The notes: generated by a model not told the origin, from the sequence alone. A stretch of DNA of 64,000 bases from Podarcis erhardii (GCA_964252035.1 OZ176200.1), one strand, 5' to 3'; shown: positions 11,775 through 58,596, numbered from the stretch's first letter. Made by a program: numbers and translations.

Positions 11775-12554
11775 TACTGGGCAGTTATTTCTCCACAAGG
11801 GCTGACACTGATGCCGAAACGCAGCATTGCCTGAGCTCTGTGAGTGCAGCTTTCTCCCAGTTGAAGTGTTTGAGGAGCGGGACGTTCTCAGGGAAACTGA
11901 AATGCTTGTTTATAAATCTACTGTACTACCAACCTTACTGTATGCTTGTGAAACATGGACCACTTATAAATGCCATCTCCAACTCCTCAAAAGATTCCAT
12001 CAACTGTGTCTCCAAAAATTTTTCCATATCACTTGGGAACACAGGCAAACTAATGCCAGTGTACTGGAAGAAGCAAAGATCACCAGTGTCGAAGCAATGA
12101 TTCTTCAACATCAACTTGGACTGGTCATGTTGTTTAGATGCCTGATTATTGTCTTCCAAAGCAACTACTATATTCCAAACTTAAAATTGGAAAGCGTAAT
12201 GCTGGTGGTCAACAAAAGAGGTTTAAAGACTCTCTCAAGGCAAATCTAAAAAAATGTAGTATAAATGATGACAATTGGGAAACACTGGCTTGCGAGCGCT
12301 CCAATTGGAGAACAGCCTTTGTCATGAACTTTGAAGGCGCTTGAACTTGGGACGAAAGGGAAAAATGTGCTAAGAGGAAGGCACACTTGGCAAACCCTCA
12401 CCATGATCAACTCCCATCCGGAAACCTATGTCCCCACTGTGGAAGGACATGTGCATCCAGAATTGGCCTCCACAGTCACTTACGGACTCACTGTTGCGAC
12501 CATGTTCATGGAAGACAATCTTACTCAGCTACGAGTGATCGCCAAAGAAGAAGA
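11775..12554 (+). mobile_element. 5'-truncated RTE-clade LINE (RT C-terminus plus C2H2 zinc knuckle), frameshifted
   Basis: Translations VYKSTVLPTLLYACETWT..., LPKQLLYSKLKIGKRNAGGQQKRFKDSLK and CPHCGRTCASRIGLHSHLRTH across shifted frames. (GAA)-type tail at 12547-12554. Confidence 0.9.
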
Positions 12555-13218
12555 GCTAGAGTGGAGAATCTTTTCCATTACAGCTACTGCAGCAGCAGCA
12601 GCAGCAAGGTAAACAAGGGAGCTGAAGCAGTACTAAGGGGCAACCAAAGAAGAACCCATATCCTTACCAGACAGAAACACAAAATAATAATCATTCGCAT
12701 CAGCATCTGCCACTCATCTGGCTGGGTTGCCCCAGCTACTCTGGGCAGCTTCCAGAGAACAAAGGCAAGGAACAGTCCCTAACTCAGCTGCTGCTTTGCA
12801 TCTCCCTCTGGTAAGCATATATGGAATACCTTTGCAATCCACCACACCCACCACTCAGTGGGAACTGTAGAGTACCACCTCAGCTGTATGCTTACCTGAC
12901 TGCAGTGCAGCTTTAAAGGAAGGAAAGCCTTCAGGGTTGCCAGATTGGGTACAGTGTGCAAAATGGCATGAACTGAACATACTTTAAGAAAAAAGAAAAT
13001 ATTTTTTCAGCCCTTAAGCAATCCTTAATGAAAAAGAAAAAGGCCCTAATATTTATTAATCTGCCACTTGGCTGAGAAGAAAAATCAAGAACTCTCAGTT
13101 TGTTGAGGTCTAATAATTTTAAAAGGAGACACGCAGTAACTGAATGGATCAGATCGCAACAGCCCCAGTGAAGTGGGCTAGTCACCACAGTGGAAATAAG
13201 CCAAATAGATCAGCCAGC

Positions 13219-17100: not shown

Positions 17101-18198
17101 TTTGAATTTGTGAGAGGTTTCTGCACAAACCACATTGAAATTAGCTGAAGTTGCATGGCAGTGTGTGTCTGCTGGATTCCCTTCCTTGGAAAACAACATG
17201 GCAGTTTGAGAATTTCCTTCTTTCAGGCACTTGGAGGTTACAGAAGGATAAAAGATCAAACAAGCCCAGATATAAACATGCTCTTAATATTGGATTTTTT
17301 TCTTAAGGGACATTGCAAGACAATCTAAACGAAAAAACAAAGCTAGTCTTACTCTGTTTCCTTCTGGGTTCAAAGGTGGATGGGTTTGTTTGTTGTTTAA
17401 ACTCCAGCTTCTTTCAAATAGCAAAACTTGAAAATATTATCCTCAGAAAAGGAAAGGAAAAAATTGCAGCAAGCAACTTGGCTAATTTGCCTAAAATCAG
17501 AATTACTTTTAGAAGAATAACAAACAGTGCCTGCCTTGTACTTTAAAATCTTGCAGAATGAAGTTCAGCAAAAGGTGAAGTAGTGGAATTAGAAAGATAA
17601 GTGGCTGTGTCACTGGAGACTTCTGCATTGGCAGCATCCAAAAACATACCTAAACAAACAGGAGCACTTTTTCCTTCCATACGTTAGGTCTTTCTCTCAC
17701 CATCCACAGTGTAATTTTTAATTATTTGTTTTGTTGTTGCAAGTGTATTCTTAGGCTATGCACAAGCAGACAAAAACCTGGCATTATCTGAAATAGTTAA
17801 AAAGACCTTTTCTATGGTACAGCGAACCACAGAATTTCCAGCCGCTGAGGGAGGCCAGTTGACCACTTACATTCCCCCCCCCCAGCCCGGTGATAAAATT
17901 AATGGATTGTTTTGATTCATACAATACTTTTCATGCCTAACTGGGGGAAGCACACAGCTAGAATAAAGGAGGAGGAAGAACAATCATCCTGAAGAAACCA
18001 AGTTCAATGTAAAGGGAGCTAATTGCAAGATGATTGCATTCTGCAAAACAAGAGGTGCTTGTGGCATTACATACCATCACAAGGGCTAGGCTTTTCCACC
18101 CTGCTGCTGCCTCTAAACAAGCTGATTTGCTAACAAAGTGGTCAGCACTCGCTCAGCATCTCAGTAGGTCCACTGCCGGCTGCTTTCCCAAGCAGAGA

Positions 18199-18433
18199 NN
18201 NNNNNNNNNNNNNNNNNNNNNNNNNNNNNNNNNNNNNNNNNNNNNNNNNNNNNNNNNNNNNNNNNNNNNNNNNNNNNNNNNNNNNNNNNNNNNNNNNNNN
18301 NNNNNNNNNNNNNNNNNNNNNNNNNNNNNNNNNNNNNNNNNNNNNNNNNNNNNNNNNGGCAGCCAGCCAGCCAGCTTCATTCACCACACAAAACTCCATC
18401 AACATCACATTACAGTTGGAAAAAGAAAGGTGG

Positions 18434-18506
<73 letters not shown>

Positions 18507-21500
18507 CCAAAGCCTTGTAGTCCCAATCCCTGGCATGCTTACTTTCAAGAAAAATCTCACTAAAATGCTTTAAATCAAAGCTTCAAATTTGCTAGAGCTA
18601 GAAGGGATGGAGATGGATGGAAGGATTGGCAGCCAGAGAAGGGATGATGACACCACATTAGAATTATGCAATATATAGAAAGCATCTACAAGCTTTGACT
18701 ATGTGTAAACTGTTCCTTTTCATTTGTCACATCTATGCTATAACAAGCACTTGTGGGAACACTGCAGCCTGAAAGTATTTATTTGAAAAACAAAACAGAG
18801 TACATCTTTTTATATATATTAAAAAAAAACCCTTTTAAAAAGCCACAAGGCCTCAAGAGGTTGGTTGGTCCTTGTTGCACTGCAATAAAATTAAAATAGT
18901 TCACAACTTTCTCTAATGAATTTAAATATTACACTATTTAGATGAATAATGAACTTCGAATGTGTGAGCTATTAAAAAGCCATTAAAAACAACCACAAAA
19001 TGCATTAGTACATTTAAACCGCGTATTGTGTAAGGAAAAGAAAAACAAGTCTACAGTGAAATTATCTGCTTGTTTACTCAGAAGTAAGCTCCACAGATCT
19101 ACATGGAGCTCGCTTCCATTTGAGTGTTTATATATAGAATGGCAACCATACTTGATCAAGCGGGAGTCAAGTATCTATCTGATGCAGNNNNNNNNNNNNN
19201 NNNNNNNNNNNNNNNNNNNNNNNNNNNNNNNNNNNNNNNNNNNNNNNNNNNNNNNNNNNNNNNNNNNNNNNNNNNNNNNNNNNNNNNNNNNNNNNNNNNN
19301 NNNNNNNNNNNNNNNNNNNNNNNNNNNNNNNNNNNNNNNNNNNNNNNNNNNNNNNNNNNNNNNNNNNNNTGTTTACGAGAGATTTTGTTTTTACAAAATA
19401 GAATTACATAAATGCCCTTAAAATTAAATAAACCACAAGCTGACAGACTAGTAATAGCAACTCTCTTGCCATAGGTCTTCCATCCTTACATGAAGAAGCA
19501 ACCAACAAAAACAAGGGCAGTGTGAAAGCAGAGCACAAGAGCTCTTTTGTAAGCAAAATGTCAAATATCTTCTACATTTCCTGCCAGAAATCAGTTATCA
19601 GCCCAAGTGAAAATTGGGGGTGGGGTGCTTCTATTTAACTTCCCATAAAATACAATTTATTATAAAGGGGGAGAAACAGGGAGTTGGTGTGGCCAGAGAG
19701 AAAATAAGGAAATGTACAACTAAGCTGGTGCGATGGCTCAGTACTCCAGATCAGCAGTGCATTGACCCTCTGTATCTCTGAGTCATTAGCTAGAATCCCA
19801 GCTCTGCCTTCAAGAGTAGGGAATTGAACTCACACACTGATGTGGGGAGATTCAGGATCTTGAGCATGCCAGACAGAAGGGTCATTCTCCGTGATGAGGA
19901 GGACGGTTGCCCCCCTGGGGAGGGAAAAAACTGGATGAGTGATTGTCGCACGATTCAAGCAATGGACATGCTGCTGACTCAGGGATGGACACTGACAGGC
20001 ACCAATGCGTCAGGCCAGCTTGCTCCTAGTGGGAGTTGTTTTAGGGCACTAGTGCTGACAGGTACATGCAAAAGTCAAGGGGAAATAATATACATATACA
20101 TGGTGTGTGTTTTACATCTCTATTTATACACCAACAACAAGGACACACATACAATCAAGTCTATGTGAATGAGAGTAGAAGTGGAGCACTGGCTTCTTCT
20201 GTTTAGCACATACAAAGCTCATGTTAAGCATTCATCTGTAGTGTGTGCTTGTGTTTTTCCCCGCATTAGACATTTAAGTCTGACACCCTGGTATGCGTGC
20301 ATATATTATGCACACGTGTAATTTGCATATGTGTAGTATCATGCATAAATGACAGCCAATTTAAAATGCCATTCTCTAATTTATATGCAAATTCTACCTC
20401 TGATAAAATAAAAAAAACATATTTTAAAAGCAGCTTATAATGCTAACACATTATTCCCATGAATGATTCTCAGTAAACTACATATGCTGACTGCAGGGCT
20501 CTTTTTTATTATTAAATGATTTATTGGATAGAGAACGAACCCACTTAAACTACAGTGGTTCGCATGANNNNNNNNNNNNNNNNNNNNNNNNNNNNNNNNN
20601 NNNNNNNNNNNNNNNNNNNNNNNNNNNNNNNNNNNNNNNNNNNNNNNNNNNNNNNNNNNNNNNNNNNNNNNNNNNNNNNNNNNNNNNNNNNNNNNNNNNN
20701 NNNNNNNNNNNNNNNNNNNNNNNNNNNNNNNNNNNNNNNNNNNNNNNCACCAGGGAATTGTGTACTCCAACCTATTCCCAGTTTGCTTACAGATGCAAAT
20801 ATGCACTCCTCTCTTTTAACTACTAGAGTGTGGAGATGGAAGTTTACACAAACGACATCAGTTGTGTAAAAACAATGACGGGATTTTCAAAAGTTTTAAA
20901 GTGAAAGCTGATTTATACATTTGAATTGATGTGAATATAAAAGATAGAACACTTTCAGAAACACTGAAAAACCAAATCAATAGAATTACTATATCCGAAA
21001 CAGATCAATGAAGGGAAAATAATAGAAAATATTTCAAGCTAAAAGCCAAATATTTTTCAGAGAACTATCCTCACAGCCCTACAGATATAAATGTTTAGAC
21101 TGTGATCTTCTGCCCAGCTACACACAAACAGCCGCCTTCCTATGGAAATGTTTAAAAATACATTTCCAAAAGATCCATTTCTAAAAAGCTAAACGTGAAG
21201 TATAGGGGCCCAACTAAAACATAAACCCTATTTGGGTTGCAACTATTATTGTCTTTTATCATTTCTTTATTTCAGCCTGGATATCTGCATCTGAAATTTG
21301 TCAGAATTTATCCTAAAGCAAGTGCCCTCTCCTGTGTCTATCCAAGGAATACAAGTCTTGTCTCCTCACAATTAACAAACCTTGTCTGCTGCTGCATCTC
21401 TCTCTCCCCCCCCCCCCCCGGAATGAGCATAGGCTTAAAAAAAGAAAACCCCAACATATACTGTATTTGCTGCTAGGCACTTAAATAGTTGTCTCGTCCA

Positions 21501-23069
21501 TTTTAGTAGAACACTGTACTATCCATGAAGCAACGCTTTCCCACTCTCCATCACTGTATTACACAGAGTTAAATGCTGCAAGCCAGAATAAGGATCATCA
21601 AATGGTCTAAAAATGTATGCTACACAAAGGCCTTAAAACACACACACAGTTCAGATCCAGACTGGTATAGTCAATGCCCATGATATTATTACATAAAGGC
21701 TAAATAAGAATGTCTGCATTGCTAAACTGGATTGTGGAGATAAGTGTACGTAGCAAACGTGGGGGTTGGGAGGGGGGTATTCCACAGCGTATTTGCCTTA
21801 TTAAAAGCAACATATACAAGCAACATATACTAACAAGTGTATATTTAATGTCAGAATCATCTAAATTTTATGTTTCACTAAAGCGCAAACTGTTTAGTTC
21901 TTAAAATTATGAATAACAAATTATTTTTCTACTAGTAGTAGATCCAGTTAGACAAACAGCATCCTGAAGGACAATTCATTTCATAGAAAATATGCTGAGT
22001 GCTGAAGCAAATCATTTTTATTTACCTCAATGCTAAAAATAAAATTTCAACATCCCTGCCATTTTAATCAACTGTGTATCTAAGACAATCCTACACTTTC
22101 CATCCACGTCCGAGGCCCACATTAATCAGGTGTTAATTTTTTTAAAAAAAATATGCTCTAGCTGTTTGGAGTTCATTCAAGGTATTTCATTAGGAGCTTA
22201 TTTGTTGAAAATAAACGTTCCAGCCATATCAAGTTTAACCCTTAGTGAAATGTGAATGAATGCTTTAAATGAGAAGATNNNNNNNNNNNNNNNNNNNNNN
22301 NNNNNNNNNNNNNNNNNNNNNNNNNNNNNNNNNNNNNNNNNNNNNNNNNNNNNNNNNNNNNNNNNNNNNNNNNNNNNNNNNNNNNNNNNNNNNNNNNNNN
22401 NNNNNNNNNNNNNNNNNNNNNNNNNNNNNNNNNNNNNNNNNNNNNNNNNNNNNNNNNNNNNNNNNNNNNNNNNNNNNNNNNNNNNNNNNNNNNNNNNNNN
22501 NNNNNNNNNNNNNNNNNNNNNNNNNNNNNNNNNNNNNNNNNNNNNNNNNNNNNNNNNNNNNNNNNNNNNNNNNNNNNNNNNNNNNNNNNNNNNNNNNNNN
22601 NNNNNNNNNNNNNNNNNNNNNNNNNNNNNNNNNNNNNNNNNNGGGAAAACAGCACAGCTCAGAAGAAATGGGATTTGTTCCATTTGCATGATGCTGGCTC
22701 CCTTGGGCCCCTTTCTTTCAAATCCACAGCACAAAAGACAACACTTAACATATTTGCTTAAAGATGACAACCTCATGTTGATTTCATTTGGATGTAACAG
22801 TGTCAGGATTACAGATATGAGAATATATTATATCCGTAACAGAGACTGACAAATGTATCCATCAGTAGAACTGTCTGATTCATCTGCTTATACAGCCATT
22901 TTGCCATCCCAAGGGTTCCATCTAAGTAGNNNNNNNNNNNNNNNNNNNNNNNNNNNNNNNNNNNNNNNNNNNNNNNNNNNNNNNNNNNNNNNNNNNNNNN
23001 NNNNNNNNNNNNNNNNNNNNNNNNNNNNNNNNNNNNNNNNNNNNNNNNNNNNNNNNNNNNNNNNNNNNN
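18199..23069. other. Cluster of five N runs (18199-18357, 19188-19369, 20568-20747, 22279-22642, 22930-23069)
   Basis: Lengths 159, 182, 180, 364 and 140 bp; content unknown. Confidence 0.98.
18436..18505. repeat. (CT)n(GT)n compound microsatellite
   Basis: Direct reading. Confidence 0.95.
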
Positions 23070-25645
23070 TAGATCCCCCTGGACTCAATATATTGCTGGT
23101 TTTAAGCAACTTTCATTCTATACCATCAAAACTAAGATCAAAATAAACCAACAGCATATTTTTTAAAAAAACAAAAACAAATGTAGATTTTTTTAAAGTA
23201 CCCATTTTAAAATGTGTGCTTTAATCAAATTAAAAAAAATGTCACTCAATAAGTACATTAAGCTTACTTGGCCACTTAAAGGAATGTGTAGCACAATATC
23301 CCGGAATTCACACACCAGCATGTAAATATTTCCATAGTAGTAGTAACACATTATTGCATTGTACTCCCTTATATTTGGACTTCCAAAAGTGGTTTGTCTT
23401 TTTATTTTAAGGAATTCCTTGATGTGTATATATTTATATCTAAAAACAGACCAGCAACTAGTCTTTAAAGATGCACAATACTACAGAAATGTTGATGTCA
23501 ACAGACACGCACATGTCTCTGCGGCTCCCTTCTGCGTATGATTTTATAGATCAACCCCACCCCTTTCTGATGAAATTAAGCAGTTAGGTAATGGTTTCAC
23601 TCCATTTCAAAGTGCATTACTTTGAATTGTGTATAGGGGCTTGTTCGTTCTTTCGTTCGTTCTCTCTCTCTATCCCTCCCTCCCTCTCTTTCTTTCTCTC
23701 CCGCGCCACCCCCTCCCACTACACAAAGTGACTAGGCATAATGAAATGCTGGCTGCATGTCTTTGTCCAGAGGAACTCTAAACTGCTTGTTGCTATTTGC
23801 TGGCACACAAGAACTGCACCATAATTCACTAGATTGGAGCTGTTTTGTAAAATGGAGTTAACTGCTGTACGTGGAATTTCAGCCCTGCAGATGGTTACGA
23901 ATCATTATTTTCAATTTGTTTAGTTTCACATAAGGAAAGGAGTATGGGGAGGGGGAGCGAGATCAAAATATATGCCGAGATTGCAGGGTGGGGGGTTAGT
24001 GTACTGGTTTGCAGTAACACAGCATTAAAATAATCTAGTACAAAATACAAAACTCGTTAAAAAACGCTGAGTATATAACCCCACCTCCTCCTCTTCTTGC
24101 ATTTTTAAGAAGTTGTTCATTGATCAGAATATTCAGTCCTAAAATCTGGACCACATACAATTTTTGTTTGTTTTGTTTTGGAAATGGGATTGTAAGGTGT
24201 CTAAAAGCAAAGTCATTCTCTGTCACATTTGCCATCACTGAAGCCAAAATCATTCTATTCCATAAGTGGCTCAGTTGTCTGAGTGTAAATGGAACATAAA
24301 GCATTTATGGACAAGTGCATATGGACAGAAATTGAGCTGTAAATATATAGGCAGGGCAAATCTTGGAGCCTAGAAACATCTGGGGCTGAAACACAAGATG
24401 TGAGACTTATTCTGAAAGTGGCCACTTAATTGCACAGTTGATTTATACACTTGCTGTTTCGATTAAACAGAATATTAGAAATTTCCTGAAGAGAAATACA
24501 GAAAGTGAATGCTTTAGTAAGGATGATTATGTTTCGATCTCATTGCAGAATAGGTGAAGGGGGGGGGGAAATGGCACTCTCTCTAACACTTCTTTAGAAA
24601 ACAAATGAAGCATTTCTACTTCAAGGACAAACACTTAAAAGCTTTTCTAAATTCAAACCAAAAGCATTATTCTACAAAAGGTGCAGCCACCAAGCTTCAG
24701 TGTTTGAGAGTATCCTTAAAGCATACTTTGAGCAGTTAAATGATTAAATAGCTTCACTTTTTAAAAAAAATCTACATTTGATTATGTTGTGCAAAAGGCA
24801 TCAACAGAATTAATGCAGTTATCAGCATACTTATTAGTATTTCATTCTGGAGAGTTGATTCATTTGATTCTGGTGCCACATTATCACAGCTGCCATCAGA
24901 GGCATTCAGACATGCCTTCTTCTTAAGCAGTATTAAGGGGGCCATGAAGACCCTCTTGGTTCGAAAAGCCTCTGCCCTTCTTCACGGCAAAAGAGCCTAA
25001 AAAGAAAAGCTGTAAAAGCCATCTATTCAATAGGATAGCTTAGAAAGATTAAGGGTTTGGGCTTTTAGGCAAGGGTGGTATATACTGTCAATCATCCACT
25101 GGGTTGAAGCTTAATTTTCTCACTGGATTATATTTTCGGATTTAGCAATTAAAATATTGCCAAAGCAGTATAAGATTACATGAACTGCTTGCTGGACCAG
25201 AAGAAAGGTCCTTTTAGCATTCTTGGCTCCAACTGTGGCTAACCAGATGCTCCAAGGATACTCATGAAGGCATGTTGGAAAGAGCTGTGTATTGATGTCG
25301 TCGTCCCCCGTCCCCGCCCCCCCCGCATATACTGCCTCTGAAATATGAATATCTAATTCTTGGCTCTTATGCTGACAGCTAGGTCTATCCTCCATGAATT
25401 TCCCTTACTCTCTTCAAAAGCAGGTTAGCAGCAAGCACCATTCATGTGGCAGGGAGTTCTGTAAGTTAAGTGGAAGTAATTTATTTTGTTTCTCCTGAAC
25501 CTACTGCTAATAACTGATTTTGATGGCCCTAAATTTTGTAGATTGCAAGAGAAAATCTGAAACCATGACAGAAGTAATCATGACATTTCAAATCAACTGT
25601 ATAGTGAAGCAATCACAATTCTTATTCCTAGCACTCTGTTTACAG

Positions 25646-43573: not shown

Positions 43574-44975
43574 CAGGAATTGCATTTAAACAGTGGCCAC
43601 CATCCACCCCATCCAATTTCAGCCCTCAGCACACTATCCAATTCCCGATTTAAAATTTATAAATGTAATATCCTCATCACAAGCAGCAGGTCCAATCCGC
43701 TGTGAATATATATTACAGCTTTAACATCACAGAGGGAAATCTCCCATCTGGCAATCACATTCGCTCCAACAGCTCTAGGAAATAAAAGCGGGGGGGGGGG
43801 GGCAGGGAGAGAAGAGAAAGAGAAAGCAGCCGTGTCTTCCTGCTCTCTCCCCCCTCCCCCTTAAAAACATGTCTCAGGGCAAATTATGTGCATCTAAAAT
43901 AAACAGTTGCTGTATTGATCGCCTTAAAGTCAACAAGTTCCAAATGCAAAATAAATAAATAATAATAATCAGATAATCATCCCTATTGTAACAGCGGCTC
44001 AGGGTTACTTTGGAGAGATATAGGCACCTACTAGCATCAGCCTAGGAGTGGACATTTGGCACTCAAGCTTTGCTTTGGATTCAGGTTTGTTAGGAAAGAT
44101 CAGTGGTCACGTACTTAAGCTGACCATGAGGTTTTGCTCTGTCCTTATTTGCTTCTCCCACAGACTAGTAAAAGTGAGACAATTCGCTGTCCTTCTGTCA
44201 CCCCACAAATTCCTAATTTTTGCATTTGTGCGCAAAACAAAATCTGCTGTTATACTTTCTCTAAGCTTCTGTAACTGGACTTTTGTAAACTGCAATATAT
44301 TGAAATCCTCCCTGCCCCATTTCATCAGATCCCTCCAGGCCTATTTTTTTAAAGGTGTTTTCCAGAATGTGGCCTCTTACAATCATTTAAAAGTATGTTG
44401 CAATGACAAGCAGCTATATGGAAAAAAGGACAGAAAATACACAGGTCGTTATTAAAACTGGAGGAGGGAGGCGGAAGAATTGGTTATTGTGCACCTATGA
44501 ATCATCTTATTTTCCTATCCTGATCTAAAACCTACAAAAAAGTAGAGGGAGGAAAGATATAACGGTAGTATAGAGTAAGAAACAATAACTATTACTTTAA
44601 AATTTAAAAGGAAACATTTGCTGTGAGTGTAGGCATAGATATGTTCAGGGTTTCCCCCTCCCCTTTTTACAGTTACTAATTTACATAGTATTTGAGTGTA
44701 CACAGTTCACTTTTGGTAACATGCAACTTTAGCATTGCAACTGAGAACAAAAGTAACACTACAATCAAAGCAGCAATCAGAAACAAAATGATAACACACA
44801 AAAACTGCTTATTTACACACTTGAAGCTTTACCATTAACATCATTTATCTCTAGCCATATCCACATGCAAAGTCCTCAGATATTTTTTTTCATCATGCGC
44901 TTTTAAAATTTATCTAGATGCAAAGAAAGAGAGAAAGAAAGAAATAGAAAGACATAGATCCAAAAGCAGACATAC

Positions 44976-45000
44976 CATAAACACTGGTGCTACTGATCAT
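44976..45000 (-). CDS. FIGN: Fidgetin, first coding segment (exon 2, 25 nt, MISSTSVY + first base of Gly), phase-1 donor
   Basis: Reverse complement reads gcaagaa-ATG ATC AGT AGC ACC AGT GTT TAT G|gtatgt. MISSTSVYG is the recalled N-terminus of vertebrate fidgetin (MISSTSVYGLKMQW...). The 25-nt coding microexon followed by a huge intron matches the FIGN structure as I recall it. Canonical GT donor at 44975-44974. Confidence 0.95.
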
Positions 45001-45145
45001 TTCTTGCTGGCAGCACAAAAAAGCTGAANNNNNNNNNNNNNNNNNNNNNNNNNNNNNNNNNNNNNNNNNNNNNNNNNNNNNNNNNNNNNNNNNNNNNNNN
45101 NNNNNNNNNNNNNNNNNNNNNNNNNNNNNNNNNNNNNNNNNNNNN
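44976..45145 (-). other. FIGN: FIGN exon 2 (mostly 5'UTR); 5' boundary hidden in the N run 45029-45245
   Basis: 3' end is fixed by the donor at 44975. Visible UTR is ttcagcttttttgtgctgccagcaagaa. The upstream boundary (~45145) is only inferred from the ~170-nt mammalian exon as I recall it and cannot be seen. Confidence 0.6.
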
Positions 45146-46243
45146 NNNNNNNNNNNNNNNNNNNNNNNNNNNNNNNNNNNNNNNNNNNNNNNNNNNNNNN
45201 NNNNNNNNNNNNNNNNNNNNNNNNNNNNNNNNNNNNNNNNNNNNNAAGGGGGGGGGGAGAGCACATGANNNNNNNNNNNNNNNNNNNNNNNNNNNNNNNN
45301 NNNNNNNNNNNNNNNNNNNNNNNNNNNNNNNNNNNNNNNNNNNNNNNNNNNNNNNNNNNNNNNNNNNNNNNNNNNNNNNNNNNNNNNNNNNNNNNNNNNN
45401 CAATACGCCCACCGTGCTGTCCCCCCTCCCTCCACGATGATGTGCTTACATTTTACTGCATCAGCTTCTCTTGACATATTCACGCCCCCCCACCCTGAAC
45501 TAAAACACGGCAATTTAACCCTAACTTTCCCCTTCCGCCGATCCTCATTCGCACTAATTTGCTTAAAAGTTCGTTCCCCCAATACACCTAAGTCGCATCT
45601 TATCCGCGCGTTGCTGCTTGGAGTCCAATTTGAAAAAATAAGAGACCCACTTAAGCGAAAGTGGATTTGGCGGCGGGGTGGGGTGGAGGGGGAAGCTCTA
45701 AATCTCGCAATCGCGAACTCTTGGGCTCCTGACTATTGTTAGCAACGATCAAGGAAGGGGGGGAACCATCCACCGCGATGCTATCTCTTTACTTTCCACG
45801 CTGCGCTTAGATGAGAAAAACGGAACGGGGGGAAAAAAGAGAAAAGAATAAACCAGTCTGGAGCATGTCCTATATTTAAATATAGATTTAAAGCATTATG
45901 GCTTAGATTTAATATTTAAAAGGCACACGCACAAAATTTAAAGCGCCCGTAGCCGCCTGGGATATATTTAAAATTATATAAAATTTTAAACAGAGCGGGC
46001 GGGGGGGGGGGGGAGGATGAAGAGAGACGAACGGCGATGGGAGATCTTACCTGGAGGTTTGGTAGAGAAGCCCGGTAGGTTAGAGCAGCATCGATCCTAT
46101 CTGTTCGCTGANNNNNNNNNNNNNNNNNNNNNNNNNNNNNNNNNNNNNNNNNNNNNNNNNNNNNNNNNNNNNNNNNNNNNNNNNNNNNNNNNNNNNNNNN
46201 NNNNNNNNNNNNNNNNNNNNNNNNNNNNNNNNNNNNNNNNNNN
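45029..46243. other. Three N runs in FIGN 5' region (45029-45245, 45269-45400, 46112-46243)
   Basis: Lengths 217, 132 and 132 bp. Confidence 0.98.
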
Positions 46244-46330
46244 ATGCCAGCAGCTGAACGCCTGCGCAGAGCGCCGCCGAGCCAAATTCAAATCACTTTC
46301 ACACTCGGAGCCAAAGATCAGTTTTCAAAA
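46051..46330 (-). other. FIGN: FIGN non-coding exon 1 (5'UTR); 5' end approximate
   Basis: Consensus donor CAG|GTAAGA on the minus strand (exon ends 46051), ~0.9 kb upstream of exon 2, inside the CpG island. The middle is masked by N run 46112-46243. TSS not determinable. Confidence 0.65.
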
Positions 46331-46462
46331 AAGAGAGAGAGAGAGGAGAAGAAGGTGTGGGGGGGGGATATCGGGAGGGAGGGAGAGAGAGAGAGAGAGA
46401 GAGACGCACCAGATTCATGGGCAAGAAGAGGAGGAGAGGAAGCTCAATGGCCGCGCGCTACT

Positions 46463-46492
46463 GCCGCCGCCGCCGCCGCACCACCACCACCA
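46463..46492. repeat. (CCG)5-(CAC)4 compound trinucleotide repeat in promoter
   Basis: gccgccgccgccgccgc accaccaccacca. Confidence 0.9.
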
Positions 46493-47866
46493 GGCCCCTG
46501 GCTGCACAGGTCAGGTTACATGGTAGGGGCTGTCGCTTGCAAGGAAGCCTGCAAACACTGCCTGGAGGTGGCCGGGAGGTCATGGCAGAGCAGCCAGGAA
46601 GCTCTCCCGCCCCTCCCGCGGCCGCCAAAAGGCGAATCGGGAACTTGGGGAGTTGGGATCCCCGCTCCCAACCTCGCCTCCGCCTCCTGCAGCAAGAGAA
46701 ACACTTCTCCCAGCTCGGGCACTTTCCCTGCAGCCGGGAAAGCGCCATAGCCCGTCCCATCCCCCCAACCCCCCCACAGCAGCGGCGGCGAACGTCTCTG
46801 CCTCCCCCCCCACCCCACCGCCCGGTCCCCACCTCGCAATAAGCAACAGCGGCGGCGGCGCCTCCAGCTCCAGGCCCTACCGCAGCTCAGTGGCAGTAAT
46901 GCCTCTGTGCAGCCCGCTCGCCGTCGACTCAGCTCCCTAGACTTTGGGATGCTGCGCGGCGGCAACAGCCGAGAGCGGTGGAAGCAAGAGAAAGACCGGG
47001 AAAGGGGGGGGGGCGATCCTGCTCTGTGTGCTTGCTCGCGGGTAAAGAGTAAAGTCGCACTGTATGCTTATGGAGCTTTCCGCACCCCCCGGGTAAGAAA
47101 CTGTGTGCGGCAAAGGGGATAGCAGCCTGAATGATGCAGGATAGCAGCAGCATGGGGGGGGGGAGCGAAAAACGACCAGAGACATTAGACTTTCCCCCCT
47201 AACAGTTGCATTTTATTCCCGCTGTCTCCACTTGGAAGTTCCTTTGCGTGCAGGATCCCCTGCTCTCACTTGCTCCAAATGACGTTTCACGGCACCGTCC
47301 TGCACAAGTTCTTTCCTCACAAAGAAATTTTCCGCTGGGTTGAAGAGAGTGTTCACTGAGCAAATAAAGCCGCACTTCTTTCGGAATAGGACCCAGTGAA
47401 TTCAGTCGGGGCTTTATTTCTTAGTAAATCTCTGCAGTGGATACAGATGTAATATCCCATTAAACTCTTCAGAGTGTTTCTGTTTACTGTACTAGGCTAG
47501 TGCTGTGGGGCTGCAATCTTAGGTATGCTTTCTTGGAAGTTCTACTGAATTGCTCTCTGTTTAAAAGGACTTCCCTGTGGATTCAAACTGGCAGCACCAT
47601 CTGAGGTGAGGTGCTGAGTACACCAGGAATCTCCCACAGGATACATGGGAGTGGGAAGACAAAATATACCAAGGCTGCAATCCTAAATTGCCAAGGACCA
47701 AGTCCTGTTGAAATACTTGAATTAGTTCTGAGTAAAAATACTTTGAGGTGTGATGTCATTAAACAGGCTTGCTTGGAAGTGAGTCCAGTTTGCATTGTGA
47801 TAGTTGTAAACATGCAAAGGGTTTGGCTGTACCTCTTGTGATCCTCTGTGTTATCATTTGCAAGTG

Positions 47867-56414: not shown

Positions 56415-56570
56415 NNNNNNNNNNNNNNNNNNNNNNNNNNNNNNNNNNNNNNNNNNNNNNNNNNNNNNNNNNNNNNNNNNNNNNNNNNNNNNNNNNNNNN
56501 NNNNNNNNNNNNNNNNNNNNNNNNNNNNNNNNNNNNNNNNNNNNNNNNNNNNNNNNNNNNNNNNNNNNNN
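56415..56570. other. Isolated N run (156 bp)
   Basis: Direct reading. Confidence 0.98.
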
Positions 56571-57539
56571 AACCAGAAACAATAATTTGCAGAAAGCATC
56601 TCATGTACCACAGCTGACTGCTGCAATCATTTGGTCAACCTGTTAAAGATCAAACAGTATTCTTCACTATTCTCAGTGGTATCTTTGTAATAAAGTAGCA
56701 GCAAACAGACAATGTTTGCTTCTGGTCAGTTTTAAAGAATGTTCAGTTTATCAGTAGAGACTTTAATCTCAAGCTTCATAGAGTACAAAGAGAACATTGA
56801 TCCTACTGTGTTGTCCTTTAGGCCACAAGGCATGAGCATTTTTACATTCATTTGTCACAAAGCAAAAAAAGAAAGAAGGAAGTTAATACTTTGAAAACAC
56901 CAAATGCCATCTTTTAAAACAGAATAATTTCCTATTTCTTTCTCTCTCTCTTTCATCCCCCAACTCATCTTTTTTTCTTCCTGCTATCTGATTAGGCTTC
57001 TGTTCCACCATACTTCACAGTTGTAACTAGTGGAGAAGAGCTCCAGTGCAGGATTTCATGATTCTGGATTCCCGCCAAGTCACCCATTAGCTAGTGACCT
57101 GGTGCTCGTGTTGAATAGAGCAATATCATTCATACAGGTCCACTGTTTTGGGTTCTGCTGTGAGTAGCCTACATGAAGAATGGCACTTTACCCCAGTTAG
57201 GTAAAGAAATGTGTCACAACCAGAGTAATTATTTCTGGTGAGACCAGGTCTGCAGATGAAAAGGAATTAGATTAAATTCACACTATGCGTGTTCTGCAGT
57301 TTATTTTGCATTTTCATTTACAGAAATAAAACAAAATGAATTACTTCCTTGACCATAGAATTGTTCCCCCCCCCCGAAAGTTGCTGCAAAAAGAATAGTG
57401 TGTGCAGCACAATAGGCCTATGCAGGCATATCTTTATCAGAGTGAAGGGGGACAAGTATGCTAGCTCTTTCCCCGCATTACAGACCCTATCGCTTTCCCA
57501 TGAGTTGGATCGCTTTTGAAGTGGAACACCTACTTTGCT

Positions 57540-58596
57540 CATGGAGGTTGCCCATGACCAGGCCACGCTAACCCATGATTTAGTTATACAAAACGTTGAC
57601 CACTGAAAATGGCTCAGAAAGATCAGCTGGTTCAAAATGTGGCCACCAGAGTCCTGGATGCCAGTGTAGTTTTGACCCCACTTCAAAGTGCTGTTTTTTA
57701 AATCTATAAAGCCATAAACAATTTGGGCCTGAGCCAGTTGAAGGATTGCATGGAGCCACATCAACATGTTGTTTAGTTGTTTAGTCGTGTCCGACTCTTC
57801 GTGACCCCATGGACCAGAGCATGCCAGGCACTCCTGTCTTCCACTGCCTCCCGCAGTTTGGTCAAACTCATGCTGGTAGCTTCGAGAACACTGTCCAACC
57901 ATCTCGTCCTCTGTCGTCCCCTTCTCCTTGTGCCCTCTATCTTTCCCAACATCAGGGTCTTTTCCAGGGAGTCTTCTCTTCTCATGAGATGGCCAAAGTA
58001 TTGGAGCCTCAGCTTCAGGATCTGTCCTTCCAGTGAACACTCAGGGCTGATTTCCTTAAGAATGGATAGGTTTGATCTTCTTGCAGTCCATTGGACTCTC
58101 AAGAATCTCCTCCTGCACCATAATTCAAAAGCATCAATTCTTCGGCGATCAGCCTTCTTTATGGTCCAACTCTCACATGAACATCCTCCAAATTTGCCCA
58201 CCACTTAAATTATCAGTGTAGGCAAGCATGAGGGAGAGGGCTGTTTCTGTAGTAGCCCTGCAGATCTGGAACTCGCTCACATCTGATGTGCAGAAGGCTT
58301 CCACAGCTCTGGTCCTTTTGAAATACCTAGTGGCCTTCACATGACTGGGAAGGCTGGGCTATGCTTCTTTACATTGCTCTGCTGGCAGTTTATGTCTCAT
58401 ATCTTTGACTGGGTGTGGTTTTTCATGTTGTTGTTACTGCCAGCTTAGTAACTTTGGAGATATTGTCGTATTAAATGCCTCTATATATTTATATTGTTGA
58501 TATCGTATTGAATTTTTATTACGGGAGCTGCCTTCAGTGAATTGTACTCAGAAAGGCAGCCTATAAATATTAAGAAAAATAAATAAATAAATAAAT
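57540..58596 (+). mobile_element. Old L2 LINE 3' portion, interrupted by BovB
   Basis: cagctggttcaaaatgtggcc, ttcaaagtgctg...ctataaagccataaacaatttgggcc L2 motifs, and an (aaat)n tail at ~58577-58596. Confidence 0.6.
57768..58174 (-). mobile_element. BovB (RTE) LINE 3' fragment, 5'-truncated, young
   Basis: Open minus-strand frame ESWTIKKADRRRIDAFELWC...RRRGRQRTRWLD...HGVTKSRTRLNN, characteristic of the BovB ORF end. (CAACTAAA)-type tail. TSD acatcaacat (57758-57767) / acatgaacat (58175-58184). Confidence 0.95.

What the first reader, a model, noticed from the sequence alone, without database searches (positions are those of the whole stretch)
18199..23069. Five short N runs in unique, TE-free intron DNA may be masked ultraconserved elements of the FIGN regulatory block
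Seen: five runs of irregular length (140-364 bp) within 4.9 kb, flanked by AT-rich non-repetitive sequence. I recognise no TE between ~12.8 and ~25.6 kb, whereas TEs are frequent on both sides. Real assembly gaps usually fall in repeats or have fixed placeholder sizes. Established (from memory): FIGN lies in a gene-poor region known for arrays of highly conserved non-coding elements in vertebrates. Inference: the Ns replaced segments nearly identical to human or mammalian sequence, for example during contamination screening. If so they mark the most conserved enhancers and make the assembly look as if it lost them.
Basis: partly seen in the sequence, partly recalled or inferred. Interest (0 to 1): 0.7.

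Follow-up and report, generated by a model that had tools for sequence, protein, structure and literature searches.

The report
Purposely masked conserved stretches, FIGN intron
The five N runs are most likely stretches blanked on purpose in this copy of a lizard genome because they resemble human DNA, so they mark already known, deeply conserved non-coding elements in the second intron of the fidgetin gene and not missing sequence.

Summary
The window holds four more, three of them at a CpG island.

They do not behave like scaffold gaps:
- Two runs are separated by only 23 bases, too short to be a contig.
- Two runs are exactly 132 nt, the minimum seen.
- No length is a placeholder size, and no run ends in a repeat.

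The operators state that N runs may be masked on purpose and forbid looking the letters up "from human sequence".

The gene is FIGN on the minus strand. An ATG exon reading M-I-S-S-T-S-V-Y-(G), followed by a GTATGT donor, lies 28 nt from one N run. That places the five runs in intron 2, 22-27 kb downstream of this exon.

Published work already describes dense conserved-element clusters at FIGN.

Not tested:
- The hidden letters, which are barred.
- The FIGN start peptide, which was matched from memory only.

The idea that the public assembly lost these elements is unsupported. Verdict: ordinary, low interest.

The parts
18199..18357 (.). N run 1 (159 nt), in FIGN intron 2
   Evidence: flanks read
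19188..19369 (.). N run 2 (182 nt)
20568..20747 (.). N run 3 (180 nt). Octamer motifs (ATGCAAAT or its reverse complement) start at 20385 and 20793 in its flanks.
22279..22642 (.). N run 4 (364 nt), the only one of the five long enough to hold a 200-bp element. An octamer motif starts at 22682 in its right flank.
22930..23069 (.). N run 5 (140 nt)
45029..45245 (.). N run 6 (217 nt). It ends 28 nt upstream (minus strand) of the FIGN start codon, so it probably covers the untranslated part of exon 2 and its acceptor site.
45246..45268 (.). 23-nt island of real letters between N runs 6 and 7. It is too short to be an assembly contig and argues for in-place masking.
45269..45400 (.). N run 7 (132 nt, the minimum length seen)
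46112..46243 (.). N run 8 (132 nt), inside the CpG island and probably inside exon 1
56415..56570 (.). N run 9 (156 nt), about 10 kb upstream of the promoter on the gene's strand
44976..45000 (-). Coding start of FIGN exon 2: ATG ATC AGT AGC ACC AGT GTT TAT G, reading M I S S T S V Y and the first base of G. The donor GT is at 44975-44974 (G|GTATGT).
   Evidence: The match to the human fidgetin N-terminus is from my own memory and was not checked with a tool.
45400..47100 (-). CpG island (GC 0.55 over 46-47 kb), taken as the FIGN promoter and exon 1. A candidate exon-1 donor CCAG|GTAAGA has its last exon base at 46051.
   Evidence: The exon 1 limits are inferred; there is no RNA evidence.
18436..18506 (.). 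(TC)26(TG)n microsatellite left unmasked, 79 nt from N run 1. Whatever rule made the N runs did not blank simple repeats.

Best explanation
They are not unsequenced gaps. In a lizard, DNA that still looks human over tens to hundreds of bases is deeply conserved. The runs lie in intron 2 of fidgetin (FIGN, minus strand), 22-27 kb downstream of the ATG exon, inside a documented regulatory block rich in conserved non-coding elements. They therefore most likely hide a cluster of five conserved elements that act as developmental enhancers bound by transcription factors. Shown: position, lengths, clustering, the gene context, and that the runs do not behave like gaps. Inferred: that the filter was a human-likeness filter, that the hidden letters are conserved elements, and that those elements are enhancers.
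For: - Nine N runs of 132-364 nt, none a placeholder size, and the two smallest both exactly 132. A tie of the two smallest has a chance of 0.8-2% under smooth length models and 7% with a hard floor.
- Only 23 real bases (45246-45268) separate runs 6 and 7.
- The flanks are not low-complexity and share no 10-mer across any of the five runs.
- Simple repeats, the usual sites of gaps, are left readable.
- Three of the other four runs sit at the CpG island and at the ATG exon of the gene, places that are expected to be conserved.
- FIGN context: the peptide MISSTSVY(G) plus a GTATGT donor on the minus strand, and no long coding frame in 1-44.9 kb.
- Literature: 47 and 50 conserved elements around the two Fugu fign copies (PMC1896008). 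The FIGN;GRB14;KCNH7 cluster holds 44 UCNEs (PMC3436827). Two of the 52 densest human UCE clusters lie at the FIGN 3' and 5' ends (PMC13513235).
- Clustering p = 0.012.
- The octamer motif ATGCAAAT occurs 3 times out of 8 within 200 nt of run edges, against 0.4 expected (post hoc and weak).
Against:
- The hidden letters were not and may not be read, so conservation is inferred and not measured.
- The rule that made the masks is unknown. The one filter I met is said to 'also trip by chance'.
- Four of the five runs are under 200 nt.
- The FIGN peptide match rests on memory, and a paper search for it was blank.
- Some old short-read scaffolds do carry very short sequence islands between gaps.
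Confidence: 0.72

Rival explanations
1. They are true scaffold gaps with estimated sizes, from a short-read or mate-pair scaffolding step, that happen to fall in unique intron DNA.
For: The scan's program labels them as assembly gaps of estimated length. Irregular sizes are what size-estimating scaffolders write. Run 1 lies 79 nt from a long microsatellite. Continuity was not tested.
Against: A 23-nt island between two runs. All nine lengths fall in 132-364 nt with a repeated minimum. No repeats or duplicated ends at the edges. Clustering at a promoter, at an ATG exon and in one 4.9-kb block. The piece is chromosome-scale, with other notes placed more than 31 Mb away on it. The best-holding runs date from 2024, when gaps are normally fixed placeholders.
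Confidence: 0.12
2. They are masks made on purpose or by a filter, but for a reason unrelated to deep conservation: chance hits of a screening filter, adaptor or contaminant screening, or some other sensitive category.
For: The filter met flagged an unmasked 39-nt place (19952-19990) and is described as tripping by chance. The masking rule is not disclosed.
Against: Chance hits should not cluster five in 4.9 kb (p = 0.012). They also should not coincide with the promoter and the ATG exon of a gene known for conserved-element clusters. The operators' wording points to human sequence as a source of the hidden letters.
Confidence: 0.1
3. One or more of the five runs hides a conserved transcribed element, such as an alternative exon or a non-coding RNA exon of the FIGN locus, and not an enhancer.
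For: Elsewhere in this genome, first readers report that single N runs sit where ultraconserved poison exons of TRA2A and SRSF3 are expected (unchecked notes). In this window run 6 abuts a real exon.
Against: No listed run is on record as RNA among the holders of this stretch. There is no Rfam match in the window. The unmasked flanks show no splice-site or frame evidence. I know of no exon in FIGN intron 2 (own knowledge).
Confidence: 0.05

Closest known systems
UCNE cluster 'FIGN; GRB14; KCNH7' of UCNEbase (44 elements; Dimitrieva and Bucher, PMC3436827)
   Same: Same gene neighbourhood. Short, non-coding, clustered elements in and around FIGN that are conserved across vertebrates.
   Different: UCNEs are defined as at least 200 bp at 95% or more human-chicken identity. 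Identity could not be measured here, and four of the five masked stretches are shorter than 200 nt.
dedUCE clusters at the FIGN 5' and 3' ends (13 elements each, two of the 52 densest in the human genome; PMC13513235)
   Same: The 5'-end cluster includes elements that overlap exons. In this window N runs abut the ATG exon and sit in the presumed first exon. dedUCE accepts elements from 100 bp, which fits the run lengths.
   Different: The five runs of the finding lie 22-27 kb from the ATG exon in a compact lizard genome. Whether they belong to the human 5'-end cluster (25 kb span or less) or to other intron 2 elements is not known.
Fish-mammal conserved non-coding elements around FIGN (Woolfe and Elgar 2007, PMC1896008)
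   Same: FIGN was chosen there as one of seven loci with clusters of such elements, with 47 and 50 around the two Fugu copies. They are read as developmental cis-regulatory elements.
   Different: No alignment to those elements was made here.
Hard masking of sequence (letters replaced by N of equal length) as a data-preparation step
   Same: Irregular lengths, a minimum size, very short readable islands between masked spans, and no relation to repeats.
   Different: The rule and its reason are not disclosed. Equal length was not verified with reads.

Membership tests
Scaffold gap of an assembly | Separates two contigs, each at least as long as the assembler's minimum contig | tested here: not met
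   Runs 6 and 7 are separated by 23 bases, 45246-45268. For the five runs of the finding the shortest spacer is 287 nt, which alone is not decisive.
Scaffold gap of an assembly | Fixed placeholder length, or a broad spread of estimated lengths | tested here: not met
   The lengths are 132, 132, 140, 156, 159, 180, 182, 217 and 364. There is no placeholder size, the range is narrow and the minimum is repeated.
Scaffold gap of an assembly | No reads or contigs span it, or the spanning length differs from the written length | not tested
Ultraconserved element in the strict sense (200 bp or more, identical in human, mouse and rat) or UCNE (200 bp or more, 95% or more human-chicken identity) | Identity to human, mouse or chicken above the threshold | not testable with these tools
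Ultraconserved element in the strict sense (200 bp or more, identical in human, mouse and rat) or UCNE (200 bp or more, 95% or more human-chicken identity) | Length of at least 200 bp | tested here: inconclusive
   Only run 4 (364 nt) can hold 200 bp. Runs 1, 2, 3 and 5 are 140-182 nt. An element could reach into the readable flanks, or the mask could include padding.
Conserved non-coding element cluster of the FIGN regulatory block | Lies within or next to FIGN | tested here: met
   A minus-strand ATG exon reads MISSTSVY(G) with a GTATGT donor at 45000-44974, next to a CpG island. The peptide was matched to human fidgetin from memory only. A note places nebulin 4.9 Mb away on the same piece, which fits human 2q23-q24 by my own knowledge.
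Conserved non-coding element cluster of the FIGN regulatory block | Elements are clustered and non-coding | tested here: met
   Five runs in 4.9 kb, p = 0.012. The only long reading frames across them are made of unknown residues.
Conserved non-coding element cluster of the FIGN regulatory block | Cross-species conservation of the elements | not testable with these tools
   Conservation is only implied by the operators' wording on masking. Distant relatives hold 8-9% of the stretch's sampled words, but where those words lie could not be seen.
FIGN gene (fidgetin) | AAA ATPase coding exon | tested here: not met
   There is no long coding frame in the window. This is expected if exon 3 lies beyond the window's low end, so the gene call rests on exon 2 alone.

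The most novel reading that the evidence does not exclude
The five masked stretches form an unusually tight module of deeply conserved elements (five in 4.9 kb) in lizard FIGN intron 2. At least one of them would be a transcribed conserved exon or non-coding RNA and not an enhancer, as reported for the poison exons that other N runs of this genome are said to cover.
Probability: 0.05. Interest if true: 0.3.

Novelty: already known. Interest (0 to 1): 0.12.

Why it matters
The main value is as a warning for the rest of the scan. Clusters of them flag conserved regulatory blocks and conserved exons, not poor assembly or lost elements. First-stage notes on other windows (TSHZ1, TRA2A, SRSF3) point the same way. 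The biology underneath, a dense conserved-element cluster at FIGN, is already in the literature.

Tried and rejected
1. Read laying on 17600-23500 with four runs (same species, a close relative and two distant relatives). The aims were to test spacing across the runs and to see where distant relatives keep the sequence. Local scripts that only count motifs and composition ran on the whole window file.
2. A first motif search for the fidgetin start was blank because I had recalled the start of the paralogue FIGNL1. The right peptide was then seen in the ORF list.
3. A paper search for the 9-residue peptide found nothing.
4. Rfam at gathering score and ARAGORN on the whole window found nothing.
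5. Pfam on eight ORFs gave only a weak zinc-finger hit. The Atlas look-alike search gave many unnamed clusters at 0.95-0.97 for two retrotransposon-like ORFs, which fits repeats but proves nothing.
6. A self-comparison of the window found few repeat families, all outside 12.8-25.6 kb.
7. I did not scan metagenome or genome collections with flank letters.
8. The idea that 132 equals a 32-letter word plus 50 letters of padding on each side is only a guess and was not pursued.

Full report
**Observation.** The window holds nine N runs. Five are those of the finding: 18199-18357 (159 nt), 19188-19369 (182), 20568-20747 (180), 22279-22642 (364) and 22930-23069 (140), all within 4,871 bp. The four others are at 45029-45245 (217), 45269-45400 (132), 46112-46243 (132) and 56415-56570 (156). 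When nine runs are placed at random in 64 kb, five midpoints fall within 4.7 kb in only 1.2% of 200,000 trials.

The flanks are no more AT-rich than the rest of the window (GC 0.395 against 0.394). A (TC)26(TG)n microsatellite lies 79 nt from run 1.

**Gaps or masks?** The scan's program asked that continuity be tested first. I tried to lay reads of four public runs over 17600-23500. Continuity and true length across the runs are therefore not tested with reads. Frame is not an issue here, because the only reading frames across the runs consist of unknown residues.

Indirect evidence speaks against ordinary gaps:
- Runs 6 and 7 are separated by only 23 real bases (45246-45268). No assembler would place that as a contig between two gaps. 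It is what remains when two nearby spans are blanked.
- All nine lengths lie between 132 and 364 nt, and none is a placeholder size.
- The two shortest are both exactly 132. Such a tie is expected in 0.8-2% of draws from smooth length distributions. Another first-stage note in this genome also reports an N run of 132 (s1-268886; unchecked).
- The edges are of normal complexity and share no 10-mer across any of the five runs.
- The places where gaps usually fall, five dinucleotide and one tetranucleotide microsatellites, are fully readable.
- The piece is chromosome-scale and the best-holding public runs date from 2024. Both fit a modern assembly with fixed-size gaps.

The operators' own note says N runs may be 'masked on purpose' and forbids looking the letters up 'from human sequence'. 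I take this to mean that the hidden letters are human-like.

**What lies around them.** The minus strand at 45000-44976 reads ATG ATC AGT AGC ACC AGT GTT TAT G and is followed by GTATGT. This is a start codon, the peptide M-I-S-S-T-S-V-Y-(G) and a strong splice donor. It matches the N-terminus of human fidgetin (FIGN) as I remember it. The match rests on my own knowledge; no tool here could confirm it, and a paper search for the peptide was blank.

The rest of the gene context fits FIGN:
- The exon lies 28 nt from N run 6.
- A CpG island spans about 45.4-47.1 kb (GC 0.55). It holds N run 8 and a candidate exon-1 donor, CCAG|GTAAGA, with the last exon base at 46051 on the minus strand. This donor is inferred; there is no RNA evidence.
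- No long coding frame lies in 1-44.9 kb. The intron after the ATG exon is therefore at least 45 kb long, and the large coding exon lies beyond the window.
- The mouse fidget allele is an ETn insertion in Fign intron 2 (PMC6466679).
- In humans the 5'-end UCE cluster of FIGN overlaps two exons (PMC13513235).
- A first-stage note places nebulin 4.9 Mb away on the same piece, which fits human 2q23-q24 by my own knowledge.

The five runs lie 22-27 kb downstream of exon 2.

**What the hidden stretches most likely are.** Published work shows that FIGN is one of the classic loci with clusters of conserved non-coding elements:
- 47 and 50 elements lie around the two Fugu copies (PMC1896008).
- The FIGN;GRB14;KCNH7 cluster of UCNEbase holds 44 elements (PMC3436827).
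- Two of the 52 densest human UCE clusters lie at the FIGN 3' and 5' ends (PMC13513235).

In a lizard, a stretch that a filter still takes for human must be deeply conserved, unless the filter tripped by chance. Five chance trips in 4.9 kb, with others at the promoter and the ATG exon of the same gene, are unlikely. I therefore read the five runs as conserved non-coding elements that work as developmental enhancers. That last step is inferred from what is known of such elements, not shown here.

A weak, post hoc hint supports this. Three of the window's eight octamer motifs (ATGCAAAT) lie within 200 nt of run edges, against 0.4 expected (p = 0.006 before correction for six motifs).

**Limits of the claim.** Whether the hidden letters meet any definition of 'ultraconserved' cannot be tested under the rules. 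Four of the five runs are shorter than the 200 bp that the strict definitions need, while the 100-bp threshold of dedUCE would fit. The masking rule is not known to me.

**Transposon-free block.** The small repeat families within the window lie at 3.6-7.5, 36-38, 49-53 and 59 kb. The retrotransposon-like reading frames lie at 11.8-12.8 and 57.3-58.2 kb (many look-alike clusters of unnamed fragments). None lies between 12.8 and 25.6 kb. A GC-richer stretch at about 19.70-20.06 kb looks SINE-like to my eye but gave no tRNA or Rfam match. Without a repeat library the claim is only partly tested.

**Earlier notes of the scan.** First readers reported the same pattern on other pieces of this genome: N blocks around TSHZ1 (s1-215004), eight irregular runs in an enhancer-like intron (s1-217739), a cluster upstream of an exon (s1-229725), and single runs where the ultraconserved poison exons of TRA2A (s1-241326) and SRSF3 (s1-220708) are expected. 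None had been followed up and I could not check them. They are leads, not independent evidence.

**Verdict.** The biology beneath them is a known conserved-element cluster of the FIGN block. This is ordinary; its use is as a reading rule for other windows of this genome.

Noticed in passing
window 44974-45000 (minus strand): Start of the fidgetin coding sequence: ATG, then MISSTSVY(G) and a G|GTATGT donor, only 25 coding bases in this exon. It fixes the gene's strand and shows that the window covers the FIGN 5' end.
   Followed up: partly
window 45400-47100: A CpG island with (GA)n tracts and G runs holds N run 8. A strong minus-strand donor, CCAG|GTAAGA, has its last exon base at 46051 and may end exon 1, which would give a first intron of under about 1 kb.
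   Followed up: partly
They lie in a GC-richer, possibly SINE-derived stretch at about 19.70-20.06 kb.
   Followed up: no
window 11827-12782 (+) and 57318-58208 (-): Reading frames that look like the tails of LINE retrotransposons (BovB/RTE-like and CR1/L2-like by eye). Pfam is blank, apart from a weak zinc-finger match below the curated cut-off on 12387-12782; the Atlas shows many unnamed fragment clusters at 0.95-0.97.
   Followed up: partly
window 20385, 20793, 22682: Three perfect POU octamer motifs (ATGCAAAT / ATTTGCAT) lie within 200 nt of N runs 3 and 4. The whole window has eight.
   Followed up: partly
window 17600-23500, run table: Two more distant organisms (F and G) hold 8-9% of the stretch's sampled 31-letter words, while four closer ones hold 62-78%. 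Where the shared words lie relative to the N runs would be a cheap conservation test, but it could not be run.
   Followed up: no
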